32,000 nt of DNA from Wallemia ichthyophaga EXF-994 (GCF_000400465.1 NW_008806283.1:270001-302000); one strand, 5' to 3'; counted from the stretch's first letter, positions 6,957 to 14,765 are shown. The notes: generated from the letters alone by a model not told the origin. Made by a program: numbers and translations.

Positions 6957-9158
6957 TTATTTTGCTTCTTCATCGACGATAGTGGTTCCTTTGAGACCCT
7001 TGAGTGCTTTCCTCTTGTTCTTGCGTAGTCGAACAGATTCGCGGACATTGAAACCATCGGCAAGCAGTGATTGTACATCTTCTAGGTGAAGCCCAGCTGT
7101 CTCTGGGTAGCAAAAAAGTAGGTACATCCACCCGCAGAAGACAAAGCCAGCGAACAAACCAAATGTTCCCGAAGGTGTAATACCCTTTTGCATGGAGAGA
7201 TAAGACTCTGAAATGATCAAGTTGCACGCCCAGTTTGTTGCGGTGCCAATACCAGTTCCAAGACCTCTGGTTTCTAAGGGAAACAGCTCGCTCATTGTCC
7301 ACGGTAAGTGGCCCAAACTTTAATGATGTCAGCCTGTTGCTTCTTTCTCCAAATGGCACGTACCCAATACCATAAGCCCCGACGTAGGCGACAAAGCCAA
7401 TAATTACAGCGACTTGCTTACCAGAATCGTATGTGACGGCAGGATCTTCAACCAATTGGAACCCGGTGTCTTTAGTGAGATAGTAAAGTGAGACAATCGC
7501 CCACACACAACCCAGGATAACGCCTGGCGCACTTAAATACACCATCTTGAACAATTAATAGAGTTCAAATGCGTTCATGACATTAGACTTACCAAAGGGC
7601 GACGGCCTGTCTTATCAACTAAAAACATGCCCAAGCTTGTAAAGACGAAATTAGCAGCAGCAATAATCAAGCCACCTAGAGGCGAGTTCTCGAATCCAAG
7701 CATCTGGAAGAGAGTGGGGCTGTGAATGTGAGAAAATGATCCTAAAGAATAGATTCTGGTGAAAAGTTTCACAAGAATCTTTTCACCGAAGCTATTCACT
7801 AGATCTATTTACTTACGCGAAATACATCAATCCGTTGAAACCTGACAATCTATCCTGAGTCAGCTATGCGATAAGATAAGGTAGATCGCTCAACTGTTGA
7901 GAGCTTAATTTGAAAGTCAGAAAAAGTCAGAATGAAAAATCGAACTGACGCCTGTAAAGTCATCGCGAGAGACAGAGCCCTAAGGTTCTTTGGTATAGTG
8001 AACAGTGACTTGAAGAGCTGCCATACAGTGTTTTCCCTCTTAACCTGTACGCTTTCATCGACGTTGGCGACGAGAATCTGCACAGTGTGAGTATGCGCGG
8101 CGAATAGCCAAGCTACTTACATCGTATTTGAGAGCCAGCTCTTCTTGTGTAGCCTGCTGATATACGCGAGCAAGCTACGTGTAAGCTTCTTCGTTGCGCT
8201 CCCGGGAGAGCAAATAACGGGGCGACTCCGGCAGGTAATGTACAGCAATGGCCTGGTATATTGCGGGCGCAGCGCCAATCACCAGCATAATGCGCCAGTT
8301 GTCCGGATCATTGAAGTTGATGAGACCAGCACCAATTCCGTACGCAATGACTTGGCCCAATGTGATTGTGACAGAGTTGATAGTGACGAGTGTGCCGCGC
8401 AGTTGAGGCGGGGAAATCTCACTAATGAAAAGTGGCCCAATACAACTGGAAAACCCTACCCCGAATCCCAAGATAAGGCGACCAACCGCGGCTTGAGCGA
8501 CCGAGTACGACGCACCAAAGACTACTGTACCAATACAGTAGCAGATATCACTGATGACGAGTACCCATTTGCGACCAATCCTGTCACTCAGAGCACCAGC
8601 GAAGAGGGAGCAAATGAATGCACCTGCCGTAGTCATAGCTGTGACTACCTCTGTGAGATGCATTAGCTCGAGCATACGGTGAAGGCAAGGTGAGCACATT
8701 GAGTGCAAATTTTTACCAACCTTTGTGATTCGAGGAGAGGGGCTCGTTATTCAAACTCGTACCAATAGAGACTGTAATACTACCGATAATACCAGTCTCA
8801 TAGCCTGCGCAGGGTTAGATGGGTCTGTTGAATGGGGAAGGTACGAACCGAACTGTGAGTCGTTAGGGTGATCTACCGGTGAAGAAAGGCACTCACCATA
8901 AATCCTGCAACGGCTGCCGTCACACAGACAAAGACAATGTATAAGGTCACCTACGCAACAACGTTAGTCTAAGTAGTGATTGCACACACGACGCACTTTC
9001 TCCTCCCCCTCTGCCATAACGATCTTGTCGTCGACGTCAACAAACTTCTTTGATTTGGGGTTGCTGTTGTCGACGTTCTCTACGTGCTCAGCGGCACCGT
9101 TGAACCGCCTTTTATCTTCCTCGGTGAATGGTTTCTTGTCTTCGGTGAATTTCGACAT
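6957..9158 (-). CDS. ITR1: MFS sugar-porter family transporter, myo-inositol transporter (Itr)-like, multi-exon
   Basis: ATG at 9158 (MSKFTEDK). Spliced peptides include AVAGFM|FG|YETG, LSDRIGRKWV, PLFISEISPPQLRG, LPESPRYL, VDKTGRR and SELFPLETRGLGTGIGTATNWACNL...PETAG. Numerous short GT-AG introns. Confidence 0.9.
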
Positions 9159-9262
9159 TAGAGAAAACAAAGATGAAGAAGACAGCCTATAAATAATGGC
9201 GTATCTAATTCATTCAGATGATTGATTGACACATCTGATCTGGCGGAAGACAGGCACATTGG

Positions 9263-11130: not shown

Positions 11131-12462
11131 TTAGTCAAAGAAACATTCGAGCTTTCTCTCAAATTCTCTACCTGCATCTCTGTCAGCTTTCTTGAGGCTC
11201 TTGATTTTATGTCTCTGACGTCTATTGCTGCACATAAACAAAGGTCTATATTTGTTAGACCATAATACGAGGCGATTGACATAGCAGTTAACGTCGACGT
11301 TGACAATACGGAGATCGTGAAAGGGCGACAGGGCATTAGATGACGAAGCTCTGTCCCTGTTGTTTTGGTCCACCTGCGCGGCCGCATACGCCTTGCATTG
11401 GTTTGAGTCGCACAGCTTGAGCTGCTCCACATACTCATAGCCCTCTTTTGGGGCGACGCTAAATTCTCTCCTCTTCGCATCATCATCTACTGCCCGTAAG
11501 TAGCAGCTCTTGAGGTTATAGTGGCAGATGGAACATTTCTTGACGGTATGCGAGTCGTTCGAGACTAGGACAACATCAATACTGCGCTCGATGAGGGAAT
11601 TCACGATGGCGTGTCCCTAAAATAGATTTCAAGTCAGAAATCAAGGCACCGCATGAAACAAAACAACCCCACCTTCCCCTTCATCATGCTGTCGCCGACA
11701 ACAATGATGAGTTGCTTGGAGCTGGCTACGGGCCTATATGTTTTCTCTAATTTTCTCGCAAAGTCCTCGAGTGGACTGCCTAGATCGAACTTAGTTTTCT
11801 CGGTGATGTATGCACTGCTAGAGTAGAAGGAGCGCAGAATAGAGCTCTCGTAGTTAATTATACTCATATACAGCTCAGGACTTCTCAGACCAAGCTCTTC
11901 AGCTTCAATAGTCGCTATTCTGTCCTCACTAGCCTTCACCTTGTCAGACTTCATCCGCTCGATACGCTTCTCAAATGCCATCCTTCTCGTCTTCTTGGAG
12001 AGAGAAAACTTAAACTTTTCGGAACGGTTACGTGGATTGCTGTTTTCTGAACCCCCTACTATGCTGTCGGAGGCCTCATTCAAATGCAGGCTCACTGCAA
12101 AGTAATTGCCACGAACCTCAAACGCGACATCTTCTAATCTAAAAAGTGACATAGTTTGAAAGAAGATCGAGACTTTTTTACATGGTGCATGGCGGAAGTT
12201 GTGCTTTCAGGTACAGCACAGCGGAACGGTGAGGTTTGAGGGGTGCCGTAAGGTGTCTGAGGGGAATTTGAGAAGAGTTTGAAATGGCGCGTAGGAAATC
12301 ATGTAAAGAAATGTATATTAAGACAGTAACGGCATAAGTTACGTCCCGTCCAGCAGACAAACGATGACCCGGTTGTGTTGATTCAGTCGAAACGAATTTT
12401 ATAGAGAGCAATGAGTGCTTTGAGCACACTTCTTTCGCTGTCAAGTGCTTTGTACTGCGCAT
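11131..12462 (-). CDS. Intron-containing Fanzor/TnpB-like protein (split RuvC + zinc finger); 5' end uncertain
   Basis: ORFs 12178-12462, 11634-12152 and 11131-11604 join in frame via introns 12181-12139 (43 nt, GTAAAA..TTTTAG) and 11672-11617 (56 nt, GTGGGG..CTGAC..TTTTAG). Spliced protein: ...VAFEVRGNYFAV...LRSFYSS...KFD...FARKL...IIVVGDSMMKGK|GHAIVNSLIERSIDVVLVSNDSHTVKKCSIC...LKLCDSNQC...VNVDVNCYVN...RPLFMC. This follows the remembered Fanzor C-terminal order (viaxG...kg...vvlvdExxTSxxCxxC...CxxxxC...nRDxNaaxN...RPxf). Confidence 0.72.
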
Positions 12463-13146
12463 TCATTACGTCAGTCTTCTGGTTGAGCTGTTCTGTCTCG
12501 AGACGCAGTTGCCTCATATCACCCTCGATTTGTTTGCATTTCTAGATTGATATGCTGTTAGACTCGCAATGCAATGCGTCGTCCTTCCTCAGCATATCTA
12601 GCTCGGGCTTCTGCACCTAGATTGAGAGATTTTTTAATGCCACACGTTCCTGAAAGATAAACTGCCTTCATCAGTTGCCTCCACTGGCGAATCTGACCAT
12701 GACGTTTACAGATTGAGAATTTTTGTGAGTATCTGCGTTTGTGTCTATCTCTTCAATTTCCTCCACTTCCTCCAGCTTGTTTAGCCTATGATGTCGGGTG
12801 TAAGCCTTGATGGATGTGAAAACACCTTCATCTGACAGTTTTTATTGTGCTGATTCCCGAGTAGGGGATGTGTGAGAGGAGATACGAGCCAGTGATGGTG
12901 GAAAAATTATGGCATCTTTTGATTATGAAGGTTAAAAGAGCAATTATTTGCAGCTATCACAGGATCTCTTATAACGCTTCCTTGACTTAAAAAAAAAAAT
13001 TGAGACACACATACTGCAAAAACTTCATTTACAAGATGCAAACATCCTCAGCAACACAACTAACACAAATAACACAAAATAACGCTTAACAAGGTCATAT
13101 ATAATCATTCCCGATCACTCATAAATACTTCCCAAACAATCCCCCA

Positions 13147-14765
13147 TCACAACATAACCAACGCGATTCCAGAGCAATCTCTTCCTGATCCAATACCCCC
13201 ATTGATCTGCTTAGACAGCTTCCAGTTGAATATGTAGTAGTTGAGCAAGCCACTGCCTGGCTTAAACTTCTGATCGCTGATAAAGTGGTTGCTCTCCATT
13301 AAAGTAAGTGTGTTGAACACATCGAAGCCGGTGCTCTTAGACACGCGCAGGATAGCTTCGACGAGTCTATTCAATCTCTCGCCTACTCTTGACCTCTTCG
13401 CCACTTCTAGTTTTCTCGGGAAGACTGTGGTGGATGACGACCTCCAATCATCCGGCAAAGCCTTTTCTGTAGCGTAGTAGAACATGTAAGCGGCGTCAAG
13501 GATTGGATGCTTATCATTCCCGACGACGGTGCTAGGAAGGGAGTAAAAGGAGATAAAGTCGGTGATGAGTTTGGTCTGTGGATCCTCGACGACATAAGCC
13601 CATACCACCTGCTTCTCTCTCATTGGCTTGCCGTCAATGTACTCGCCCTCACCGCGCCCGCTGAGGAAGGTATGTCTGACCTCCTCTTGGCTGAAAATCG
13701 GGGCGAGTTCGAATCTCGACAGGTAGGCTTTGAGGAGGGCAGTGACGCCGGCGACGTCCTTCTCTTCCATCTCCCTGAAACCTTCCGGCTGCGGCCTGGT
13801 TGGGGAATTGGCTGGTATATCGCTAGCTTTGGCCATCTTCTCGATCGACATGCCCGGCTGGGGCTGAGAGAAGCCCGTGTCTACCAGTTTCGGCACGTTG
13901 ATCGGTCTGTGAAAGTACTGACAGGTGGATATGATACCCGGGAGAACATTTCCACCCGTGTAAGTTGCTTGATAGACACCTTTGAGATTGCACCTGCGCG
14001 TCACCTCCTTAATGAGCACCGGGGCGAGCCTCTTGGAGCGCAGCTTTTTGTGCACGCAGAGGAAATTGACTTCGGATGTGTTTAGCGTGCGCTTGTTGAC
14101 GTCGATAGTCATAGGCACGGCGCCTATGAAGGCTACAAGTTTGCGCTTACCGGAAGCGACACGCACACCGACATGCCAGCTCTTTTGATATCCCGGTGGC
14201 TTGAGTGCCCATGCGATGAATTCGGCAGAGTAGTTGAATCGCAGTGTAGCGTCATCGTCTTCGACGTAGTTGAGACAAAGAAGTTCTCTGACATCTTCGA
14301 GCTGCGACGAGTGTCAGAGGGAGTGAACACACTACACACTTCACTGACCTCTTGCGCATTGTCAAGATCGACGTCAACCCATTCGTACTCCTTGGGCAGC
14401 GGCAGAGGCACTTTGCTGAACTTTTCGACGTCGACGGTGGGATCGATGGGACCGTCTTGGCTGCCTTCTTGGGGGAGAGCGACGGGCTGTGTGCTCCAGA
14501 ATTTGTGTTGACCCATGTCCTTCTTGTTGCCTTGGCCGACGCCAGAAGAGCCAGCAAGAACTTCAGAGATGTTCATCTGGGTGAGTAGCTGCCTCACGCT
14601 ATCCTTGTCGAGGCCATTGGTATCTTCGTTGTTGCTGAGTTGTTGTTGAATAGCTTTGAGCGGGTTGATCGGCACTTTGTCGCTCTTCTTGTCTGTGTAT
14701 TATTGTCAGGAGGTTGTTGAGATGTATTCCAAATTCCCACCGTCTTTGCGATTATTTTCCGACAT
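13147..14765 (-). CDS. NMT1: Glycylpeptide N-myristoyltransferase
   Basis: ATG at 14765 with two short introns. Motifs HKFWSTQPV, LNYVEDDD..RFNYS, EVNFLCVHKKLRSKRLAPVLIKEVTRR, FDVFNTL, KFKPGSGLLNYYIFNW and C-terminal IALVML. Confidence 0.97.

What the first reader, a model, noticed from the sequence alone, without database searches (positions are those of the whole stretch)
11250..12125. Apparent D->E and E->D substitutions in the RuvC triad: possibly a domesticated or non-cutting Fanzor
By eye, RuvC-I (xgiDpG) aligns with VAFEVRG, the Fanzor-type RuvC-II glutamate (vdExxTS) aligns with SNDSHT, and RuvC-III Asp is retained (VNVDVN). There is also a second RuvC-III-like string, NNRDRASSSN, just upstream. 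All four zinc-finger cysteines and the reading frame are intact. Inference: the protein may be an RNA-guided DNA binder or regulator, analogous to nuclease-dead TnpB-derived TldRs in bacteria, or a nuclease with a rewired active site. That would be a new kind of eukaryotic system.
Basis: inference. Interest (0 to 1): 0.72.

Follow-up and report, generated by a model that had tools for sequence, protein, structure and literature searches.

The report
Domesticated Fanzor1 nuclease-lobe gene in Wallemia
A small, conserved, single-copy gene of the salt-loving fungus Wallemia ichthyophaga descends from the cutting half of a Fanzor1 transposon nuclease. It has lost the guide-RNA/DNA-recognition half, so it looks like a host-domesticated remnant rather than a working RNA-guided enzyme.

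Summary
The product is identical to W. ichthyophaga EXF-994 J056_000567. Pfam, NCBIfam, PDB sequence searches and a profile search of 1.84 billion proteins find nothing outside the family. The validated SpuFz1 also has no Pfam hit, so that silence says little.

A profile-profile comparison with 20 chytrid Fanzor1 RuvC regions is significant: E=5e-8, against at best 0.036 in 40 shuffles. It is colinear from beta3 through the zinc ribbon.

The gene sits between NMT1 and a transporter in several Wallemia lineages. The intron position is conserved, and pN/pS is 0.25-0.35 with synonymous sites saturated. It has no inverted repeats and no conserved 3' RNA.

It lacks the whole WED/REC half and most omegaRNA-contact residues. 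A RuvC-III Asp is kept (D248 or D268). VAFEVRG is probably not RuvC-I. No D-P-G/N motif exists here; the best candidates are N37/N39, which are Asp in some orthologues.

Verdict: a domesticated Fanzor1 derivative is supported. An RNA-guided function is not.

The parts
11673..12152 (-). Exon 1 of gene X (aa 1-160): N-terminal beta strands, long helical insert, beta4 'LIIVVGDSM'
   Evidence: ORF and splice enumeration. Identical in length to the NCBI model P0001/P0052. The Fanzor1 HMM hits this ORF piece, E=0.08, HMM positions 227-293.
11617..11672 (-). 56-nt intron (GTGGGG...CTGAC...TTTTAG), phase 0
   Evidence: It is one of several GT..AG splices that give an open frame, chosen for its CTGAC branch site and TTTTAG acceptor. 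Its 321-aa product matches the NCBI model. An intron at the same position is present in L001 (55 nt) and L002 (216 nt).
11131..11616 (-). Exon 2 (aa 161-321 plus stop): beta5, D181, zinc ribbon, RuvC-III candidates, basic tail
   Evidence: Best hit of the Fanzor1 HMM among 940 six-frame pieces of the window, E=0.006, HMM positions 360-433.
12108..12128 (-).
   Evidence: MAFFT and global hhalign alignments. E12 is E/E/D/D across lineages. R14L is polymorphic within the species.
12024..12053 (-). GSENSNPRNR (aa 34-43), the best sequence-based candidate for RuvC-I (SpuFz1 I-D383-P-N385-K-R). N37 and N39 stand where Asp/Asn metal ligands would be
   Evidence: MAFFT and hhalign and ungapped profile sliding. 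Orthologues read AEDSNPR (L001) and AEDSDPR (W. hederae, L002). Not significant alone. An alternative from the AF2 strand pattern is N25/H23.
11685..11711 (-). LIIVVGDSM (aa 148-156): beta4 with Gly at the canonical RuvC-II Glu position, as in Fanzors ('VVMGDWS')
   Evidence: hhalign. G153 is invariant. The Fanzor E-to-G/P substitution is described in PMC10530073.
11545..11571 (-). VLVSNDSHT (aa 176-184): beta5 and the alternative RuvC-II position. D181 replaces SpuFz1 E541
   Evidence: N180, D181, H183 and T184 are invariant in all lineages.
11395..11535 (-). Zinc ribbon (NUC/TNB-like): C188-x2-C191 ... C229-x4-C234
   Evidence: Aligned with Fanzor1 CPxC ... CxNxxC. All four Cys are invariant. 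The CCCC finger of SpuFz1 NUC is described in PMC10432273.
11335..11364 (-). NNRDRASSSN (aa 245-254): RuvC-III candidate 1 (D248), which alignment programs place opposite Fanzor1 'WNRD' (D606)
   Evidence: The segment after it is indel-rich and variable (N254T within the species, 3-aa deletion in L001, D248->E in W. hederae).
11212..11325 (-).
   Evidence: 87% identity to L001 in aa 261-290. D268, N270, N274, L276, R284 and P285 are invariant. MAFFT aligns RP with Fanzor1 GRPxxFSR.
11188..11226 (-). NRRQRHKIKSLKK: conserved basic tail, possibly a nuclear localisation signal (inference only)
   Evidence: Conserved in L001 and W. hederae. No test done.
12192..12245 (-). Conserved non-coding block 40-90 nt upstream of the ATG. 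Probably a cis-regulatory or 5'UTR element; no link to gene X's function is shown
   Evidence: 87% identity over 55 nt to L002, although synonymous sites are saturated. Indels of 1 and 4 nt exclude coding. No conserved structure or covariation.

Best explanation
Gene X is a host-domesticated (exapted) descendant of a Fanzor1 element that keeps only the nuclease lobe: the RuvC fold plus the CCCC zinc ribbon. Shown: it is homologous to the Fanzor1 RuvC/NUC region. The WED/REC half is absent and there are no transposon ends. It is vertically inherited at one syntenic locus in Wallemia, with a conserved intron, under purifying selection. Inferred: because the lobe that reads the TAM and cradles the guide/target duplex is gone, and most omegaRNA-contact residues are replaced, it no longer works as a Fanzor-type RNA-guided nuclease. 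It most likely acts as a guide-independent nucleic-acid-binding protein, through the conserved basic helix KKTRRMAFEKRIERMK and the zinc ribbon. In W. ichthyophaga catalysis is probably weakened or lost at RuvC-I, where there is no D-P-G/N motif and Asn sits at the best candidate positions. The other two acidic positions are retained (D181; D248 or D268).
For: Homology: hhalign of the X family against 20 chytrid Fanzor1 RuvC regions gives probability 94.8%, E=5.1e-8, 201 colinear columns. With 5 X-family sequences the result is E=1.3e-7. Controls: reversed profiles give E=0.2, and 40 column shuffles give E of 0.036 or worse. Against SpuFz1 alone, E=5e-4. The Fanzor1 HMM ranks exon 2 and exon 1 first and second among 940 six-frame pieces of the window, in colinear order. 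An AF2 model built from X-family sequences only has a beta-beta-beta-alpha...beta-alpha-beta N-terminal half at pLDDT about 57-90 (block means over residues 11-180). Foldseek's best PDB hit is a Cas12 (E=8e-3). Its viral hits at E of about 4e-4 are giant-virus proteins, one of them named 'Transposase'; weaker hits include RuvC resolvases and a Cas12f1-like TNB protein.

Domestication: orthologues exist in W. ichthyophaga strains, W. hederae and two further lineages. NMT lies upstream and the transporter downstream. The intron position is conserved. pN/pS is 0.25 (95% bootstrap 0.19-0.31) and 0.35, with pS 0.70-0.83; the corrected dN/dS is about 0.09. There are no flanking inverted repeats and only one protein cluster per species.

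Loss of guide machinery: the protein starts just upstream of the RuvC region, 11-38 residues before the candidate RuvC-I positions. No WED/REC match exists anywhere in the window. SpuFz1 omegaRNA contacts are replaced: W570, W596, R601, Y602, W603, R414, Q482, K483 become A, A, D, Q, N, M, G, S. The 3' flank is not conserved and Rfam finds nothing.
Against: No experiment and no expression data. AF2 confidence is low overall (pLDDT 57.7; 46.9 with a mixed alignment), so the active-site geometry is unknown. The RuvC-I position is unresolved: E12, N25/H23 or N37/N39. Three orthologous lineages carry Asp at position 37, and two of them also at 39, so the family may still be catalytic. Carboxylates are conserved at the other two sites, which is what one expects of an enzyme. 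SpuFz1's RuvC and NUC domains do contact omegaRNA stem-loop 1, so a different RNA partner is not excluded. A conserved 54-nt block upstream remains unexplained.
Confidence: 0.62

Rival explanations
1. X is an RNA-guided DNA binder or regulator, a eukaryotic analogue of bacterial TldR, guided by an RNA encoded nearby.
For: It descends from an RNA-guided nuclease. In SpuFz1 the RuvC and NUC domains contact omegaRNA stem-loop 1. R41, R201 and L226 stand at contact positions that are kept. A strongly conserved non-coding block lies just upstream.
Against: The WED and REC domains, which recognise the TAM and hold the heteroduplex, are absent. TldRs keep them (established knowledge of TldR). Most conserved aromatic and basic omegaRNA contacts are lost. 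There is no conserved 3' non-coding element. The 5' block shows no conserved fold or covariation. Rfam finds nothing.
Confidence: 0.1
2. X is still an active, guide-independent metal-dependent nuclease with a rewired active site (Asp for the alternative Glu; a different first ligand), used by the host, for example in structure-specific DNA or RNA processing.
For: Acidic residues are invariant or conservatively exchanged at D181 and D268, and D/E at 248. E36 is invariant. Asp is present at 37 (L001, W. hederae, L002) and at 39 (W. hederae, L002). Purifying selection acts on these blocks. The basic helix that contacts DNA in SpuFz1 is kept.
Against: In this genome the best RuvC-I candidates are Asn, and no D-P-G/N motif exists. 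A RuvC lobe without its REC/WED partner has no known activity in this family. No model is confident enough to show a formed site.
Confidence: 0.2
3. X is a decaying transposon fragment or pseudogene that gene callers happened to annotate.
For: It is truncated relative to Fanzor1, has no known-domain hit, and shows six non-synonymous against three synonymous differences between two W. ichthyophaga assemblies, the window and L003.
Against: The ORF is intact with a conserved intron in at least four lineages whose synonymous sites are saturated. pN/pS is 0.25-0.35 with confidence intervals far below 1. Flanks and intron are unalignable while the coding sequence is 56-72% identical at protein level.
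Confidence: 0.03
4. The resemblance to Fanzor is chance. X is an unrelated orphan protein.
For: There are no hits outside the family in Pfam, NCBIfam, PDB sequences or 1.84 billion representative proteins. Identity to Fanzor1 is only 18-23%.
Against: hhalign gives E=5e-8 against shuffles at 0.036 or worse. The alignment is colinear across about 200 residues and includes FYS, GD, (D/N)(E/D)xxT..C..C and Cx4C. The HMM picks both exons. Independent fold hits go to the RuvC/Cas12/TnpB class. The negative searches are uninformative because SpuFz1 itself has no Pfam hit.
Confidence: 0.05

Closest known systems
Fanzor1 (e.g. Spizellomyces punctatus SpuFz1, PDB 8GKH; Parasitella Fz1 9CF0; Guillardia Fz1 9CER)
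   Same: Homologous RuvC plus zinc-ribbon (NUC) region, colinear over about 200 residues. Gly at the canonical RuvC-II Glu position. An acidic residue at the alternative RuvC-II position. CxxC...Cx4C finger. An 'NRD'/'D..N.L' RuvC-III motif and a C-terminal 'RP..F'.
   Different: X has no WED/REC half: 321 aa against 638. It has no D-P-G/N RuvC-I motif, and Asp replaces Glu541. Most omegaRNA contacts are replaced. It has no inverted repeats, no adjacent omegaRNA, is single-copy and syntenic, and carries a roughly 20-aa extra segment with a second RuvC-III-like motif.
TldR (TnpB-like nuclease-dead repressors) and other exapted TnpB/Cas12 relatives in bacteria
   Same: A TnpB-superfamily protein taken out of its transposon and kept by the host, with altered catalytic residues.
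   Different: TldRs keep the guide-RNA and DNA-recognition domains and an adjacent guide RNA, and lose the nuclease. X does the opposite: it keeps the nuclease lobe and loses the recognition lobe. It is also eukaryotic.
Domesticated transposase-derived genes of eukaryotes (e.g. PGBD5, Kat1, PiggyMac)
   Same: Transposon-derived, single-copy, syntenic, under purifying selection, and without terminal repeats.
   Different: Those derive from DDE/DDD transposases. No host-domesticated Fanzor is named in a September 2026 OMEGA review, which lists only Cas12 and TldR as domesticated forms, nor in my other paper searches.

Membership tests
Fanzor1 (eukaryotic TnpB-like RNA-guided endonuclease) | Sequence homology to the Fanzor1 RuvC/NUC region | tested here: met
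   hhalign E=5.1e-8, probability 94.8%; shuffled and reversed controls give E of 0.036 or worse. HMM hits on both exons.
Fanzor1 (eukaryotic TnpB-like RNA-guided endonuclease) | N-terminal WED and REC domains (TAM reading, guide/target channel) | tested here: not met
   The protein begins just upstream of the RuvC region, 11-38 residues before the candidate RuvC-I positions. The Fanzor1 HMM finds no N-terminal match anywhere in the 32-kb window. The upstream kilobase has no continuous ORF.
Fanzor1 (eukaryotic TnpB-like RNA-guided endonuclease) | RuvC-I Asp in a D-P-G/N motif (SpuFz1 D383, N385) | tested here: not met
   There is no D-P-G/N in the first 60 residues. Candidates are E12, N25 and N37/N39. 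The mapping is unresolved. W. hederae has S-D-P-R.
Fanzor1 (eukaryotic TnpB-like RNA-guided endonuclease) | Canonical RuvC-II Glu replaced by Gly/Pro, and an alternative Glu downstream (SpuFz1 E541) | tested here: inconclusive
   Gly153 stands at the canonical position (met). The alternative position holds an invariant Asp181, not Glu.
Fanzor1 (eukaryotic TnpB-like RNA-guided endonuclease) | RuvC-III Asp (SpuFz1 D606) | tested here: met
   D248 is aligned by hhalign and MAFFT. D268 sits in an invariant D-V-N-x-Y-V-N-R-L block. Which of the two is the true equivalent is open.
Fanzor1 (eukaryotic TnpB-like RNA-guided endonuclease) | CCCC zinc finger in the NUC domain | tested here: met
   C188, C191, C229 and C234 are invariant and aligned with the Fanzor1 cysteines.
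Fanzor1 (eukaryotic TnpB-like RNA-guided endonuclease) | Adjacent omegaRNA at the 3' end, inverted repeats, multicopy transposon context | tested here: not met
   No flanking inverted repeats. No conserved 3' flank. No Rfam match. A single syntenic copy.
Fanzor1 (eukaryotic TnpB-like RNA-guided endonuclease) | RNA-guided DNA cleavage | not testable with these tools
   Needs biochemistry.
TldR-like nuclease-dead RNA-guided regulators | Retained guide-RNA/DNA-recognition domains with an adjacent guide RNA | tested here: not met
   WED/REC are absent. omegaRNA contacts are largely replaced. No structured conserved RNA lies nearby.
TldR-like nuclease-dead RNA-guided regulators | Loss of RuvC catalytic residues | tested here: inconclusive
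   Two of three acidic positions are retained, and the first is unresolved.
Domesticated transposon-derived host gene | Syntenic orthologues in several species, purifying selection, no transposon hallmarks | tested here: met

The most novel reading that the evidence does not exclude
Wallemia fungi keep a stand-alone Fanzor1 nuclease lobe as a host gene with a new activity. It could be a guide-independent nuclease with a D/N-D-D site. It could instead be a module that recruits a separate RNA or protein partner for targeting. Either would be the first host-domesticated Fanzor described in a eukaryote, and the mirror image of bacterial TldR, since the nuclease lobe is kept and the recognition lobe lost.
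Probability: 0.25. Interest if true: 0.8.

Novelty: new variant of a known kind. Interest (0 to 1): 0.62.

Why it matters
Fanzors are known as transposon-borne RNA-guided nucleases. Exaptation of the TnpB superfamily has so far been documented in prokaryotes (Cas12, TldR, Cas12f-derived transcription factors). A vertically inherited, selected Fanzor1 derivative in a basidiomycete would show that eukaryotic hosts also recruit these proteins. It would also give a natural 'nuclease lobe only' variant for asking what the RuvC/NUC module can do without its guide-holding half. It further shows that standard domain libraries miss Fanzor1-type RuvC domains entirely, so other such derivatives may be hidden among orphan genes.

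Tried and rejected
- Pfam, NCBIfam and PDB sequence searches with X or its family profile found nothing. A control showed that SpuFz1 itself has no Pfam hit.
- Two word-index searches and one exhaustive HMMER profile search of 1.84 billion proteins returned only the Wallemia family.
- A JGI metagenome scan found no further orthologues.
- A second AF2 run with a mixed X plus Fanzor1 alignment gave a worse model (pLDDT 46.9). I did not use it.
- I tried to fix the RuvC-I register with local hhalign on the N-terminus (not significant), global hhalign, MAFFT and ungapped profile sliding. These point to residues 34-43 but without significance. The AF2 strand pattern suggests N25 instead.
- The upstream conserved block is not a structured RNA: no covariation, -4.6 kcal/mol.
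- The upstream coiled-coil ORF is not a missing Fanzor N-terminus: no HMM hit, and Pfam gives only weak coiled-coil matches.
- Supplementary tables of two Fanzor papers gave truncated or no sequences. The full SpuFz1 sequence came from the GenBank-format supplement of PMC10432273.

Full report
**1. What is at the coordinates**

The finding lies on the minus strand. Two ORFs in different frames (12152..11634 and 11604..11131) are joined by a 56-nt intron (11672..11617) with a CTGAC branch site and a TTTTAG acceptor. The product is 321 aa. It is 98% identical to 'hypothetical protein E3P81_01237 [Wallemia ichthyophaga]'. It is identical to the EXF-994 protein J056_000567, so the window is from W. 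ichthyophaga.

- VAFEVRG: aa 9-15
- SNDSHT: aa 179-184
- NNRDRASSSN: aa 245-254
- VNVDVN: aa 265-270
- Cysteines: 188, 191, 229, 234

**2. Standard searches are silent, and why that says little**

These searches found nothing:
- Pfam at E up to 10
- NCBIfam
- PDB sequences with the single protein or a family profile
- Two word-index searches of 5.8 billion proteins
- An exhaustive HMMER profile search of 1.84 billion representatives, which returned only the Wallemia family

As a control, the experimentally validated SpuFz1 also has zero Pfam families at E up to 1. A chytrid Fanzor1 RuvC fragment reaches only E=0.016 for Cas12f1-like_TNB and 0.0035 for NCBIfam guided_TnpB. Library silence therefore does not argue against Fanzor1 ancestry.

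**3. Homology to Fanzor1**

I took the SpuFz1 sequence (XP_016604940.1) from the GenBank-format supplement of Saito et al. 2023 (PMC10432273). I collected 45 chytrid homologues of its RuvC half and aligned 20 of them (A5).

Profile-profile comparison gave these results:
- X family against SpuFz1 alone: E=5.3e-4.
- X family against A5: probability 94.8%, E=5.1e-8, score 62.2, 201 colinear columns.
- A richer X-family alignment: E=1.3e-7.
- Controls: reversed profiles score 17 (E=0.2). Forty column shuffles score at most 22.5 (E of 0.036 or worse).

MAFFT independently reproduces the same colinear alignment. The matched motifs are:

| X | SpuFz1 |
|---|---|
| FKFSLSKK | FRYTANQR |
| FEKRIERMK | FAKRREAMK |
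| SFYSS | EFYSH |
| VVGDSM | VMGDWS |
| IDVVLVSNDSHTVKKCSIC | IDCFLLDEYKTSSVCPRC |
| LKLCDSNQC | LLGCTNPNC |
| NNRD | WNRD |
| KYRPLF | HGRPEVF |

A Fanzor1 HMM searched against all 940 six-frame pieces of the window ranks exon 2 first (E=0.006) and exon 1 second (E=0.08). They fall in colinear HMM order.

An AF2 model built only from X-family sequences is poor overall (pLDDT 57.7). Its N-terminal half is better (block means about 57-90 over residues 11-180) and has the beta-beta-beta-alpha...beta-alpha-beta order of an RNase-H/RuvC fold. Foldseek's best PDB hit is a Cas12 (E=8e-3), and no hit reaches 1e-3. In the viral library, four hits reach E of 1e-3 or better: the top one is a giant-virus Hsp70, the next three are giant-virus proteins, one of them named 'Transposase'. 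Weaker hits include RuvC resolvases and a Cas12f1-like TNB protein.

I conclude that X descends from the RuvC/NUC half of a Fanzor1.

**4. It is a host gene, not a transposon or a wreck**

Orthologues:
- Many W. ichthyophaga strains
- W. hederae (TIA92546.1)
- A close relative of W. hederae (L002/P0057)
- A fourth lineage (L001, 72% identical)

Synteny is kept. NMT is upstream in L002 and L003. The MFS/sugar transporter is downstream in L003 and L001. The intron sits at the same codon in all lineages.

Synonymous sites are saturated (pS 0.70-0.83), while pN is 0.17-0.29. Uncorrected pN/pS is 0.25 (95% bootstrap 0.19-0.31) against L001 and 0.35 against L002. The corrected dN/dS is about 0.09. 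Introns and flanks do not align. There are no flanking inverted repeats, and Rfam finds nothing. NMT is 86.5% identical between the window and L002, against 56% for X. X therefore evolves fast but under constraint.

**5. What has been lost**

SpuFz1 is 638 aa, and its first ~370 residues form the WED and REC domains. These recognise the TAM and, with RuvC, form the channel for the guide/target duplex (PMC10432273).

X starts just upstream of the RuvC region, 11-38 residues before the candidate RuvC-I positions. Nothing resembling the N-terminal half is encoded upstream or elsewhere in the window.

Most conserved SpuFz1 residues that contact the omegaRNA are replaced in X:
- W570 to A
- W596 to A
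- R601 to D
- Y602 to Q
- W603 to N
- R414 to M
- Q482 to G
- K483 to S

R387, R564 and L583 are kept. No conserved non-coding element follows the stop codon. A Fanzor-type RNA-guided mechanism is therefore unlikely.

**6. The catalytic positions**

SpuFz1 binds two Mg ions through D383, N385, E541 and D606.

- **E541.** It aligns with D181 in every method, and N-D-x-H-T is invariant in all lineages. The canonical RuvC-II position is Gly153, as in Fanzors.
- **D606.** hhalign and MAFFT align it with D248 in 'NNRD'. That segment is variable and indel-rich: N254T within the species, a 3-aa deletion in L001, and D->E in W. hederae. The two motifs are 20 residues apart and may be a duplication. 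Either way an Asp is present.
- **RuvC-I.** This is unresolved. Both place I-D-P-N-K-R opposite residues 34-43, GSENSNPRNR. This gives N37 or N39 at the Asp position in W. ichthyophaga. Orthologues read AEDSNPR and AEDSDPR. That N-terminal alignment is not significant alone and implies loss of beta2. The AF2 strand pattern would instead put invariant N25/H23 there.

Under all three mappings this genome lacks the D-P-G/N motif.

**7. Interpretation**

- **Shown:** Fanzor1 descent, truncation to the nuclease lobe, and domestication.
- **Inferred:** a guide-independent nucleic-acid-binding role, with catalysis weakened or lost at RuvC-I in this species.

A still-active rewired nuclease is the main rival, because carboxylates are conserved. 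A TldR-like RNA-guided binder is unlikely. Decay and chance resemblance are contradicted.

In the literature I could search, domesticated members of this superfamily are all prokaryotic (Cas12, TldR, Cas12f-derived factors). A September 2026 review of OMEGA systems lists no eukaryotic host-domesticated Fanzor.

**8. Limits**

- Only four or five lineages are available, and the AF2 models are low-confidence.
- There are no coordinates to inspect the active site.
- There are no expression or functional data.
- The taxon of L001 is unknown.
- The W. sebi complex could not be checked at genome level.

Noticed in passing
window 12192-12245 (minus strand), 40-90 nt upstream of the ATG of gene X: A roughly 54-nt non-coding block (CACCGTTCCGCTGTGCTGTACCTGAAAGCACA.ACTTCCGC) is 87% identical to the W. 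hederae-like locus L002 and is conserved in L001, although synonymous sites between these lineages are saturated. Indels of 1 and 4 nt rule out coding. No conserved fold or covariation was found. It is probably a promoter or 5'UTR element. The W. hederae gene model (TIA92546.1) reads through it as an N-terminal extension, which looks like an annotation artefact.
   Followed up: partly
window about 12390-12541 (minus strand), between NMT1 and gene X; L001 692-868: An unannotated short ORF with a heptad leucine pattern (…QLRLETEQLNQKTDVMNAQYKALDSERSVLKALIALYK) is conserved at protein level with L001 (39% over 59 aa, E=2e-11). Pfam gives only weak coiled-coil matches, and it has no similarity to the Fanzor N-terminus. 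It may be a small unannotated gene with introns.
   Followed up: partly
window 11257-11376 (minus strand), aa 241-280 of gene X: Two RuvC-III-like motifs, N-x-D-x5-N-x-L, lie exactly 20 residues apart (NNRDRASSSNAL and VNVDVNCYVNRL). This suggests an old internal duplication of the last RuvC helix. The first copy is variable and indel-rich; the second is invariant.
   Followed up: partly
gene X, window 11131-12152, compared with L003 (GCA_004918305.1): Between two W. ichthyophaga assemblies the gene differs at 9 nucleotides, 6 of them non-synonymous (R14L, E85D, D174N, N194T, E221D, N254T). The numbers are too small to test, but the ratio is higher than between species.
   Followed up: no
not in the window (control searches): The validated Fanzor1 SpuFz1 gets no Pfam-A family at E up to 1 in this Pfam copy. 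Most chytrid Fanzor1 RuvC fragments carry no precomputed Pfam domain. Fanzor1-type RuvC domains are effectively invisible to routine domain annotation.
   Followed up: yes
window 13147-14675 (minus strand) and about 7990-9170 (minus strand): The neighbours are N-myristoyltransferase (86.5% identical to the W. hederae-like orthologue) and an MFS/sugar transporter. In the same-species locus L003, tRNA synthetase, ATG4-like peptidase C54, adenylosuccinate synthetase and CNOT1 lie beyond them. This is an ordinary housekeeping neighbourhood with no transposon genes.
   Followed up: partly
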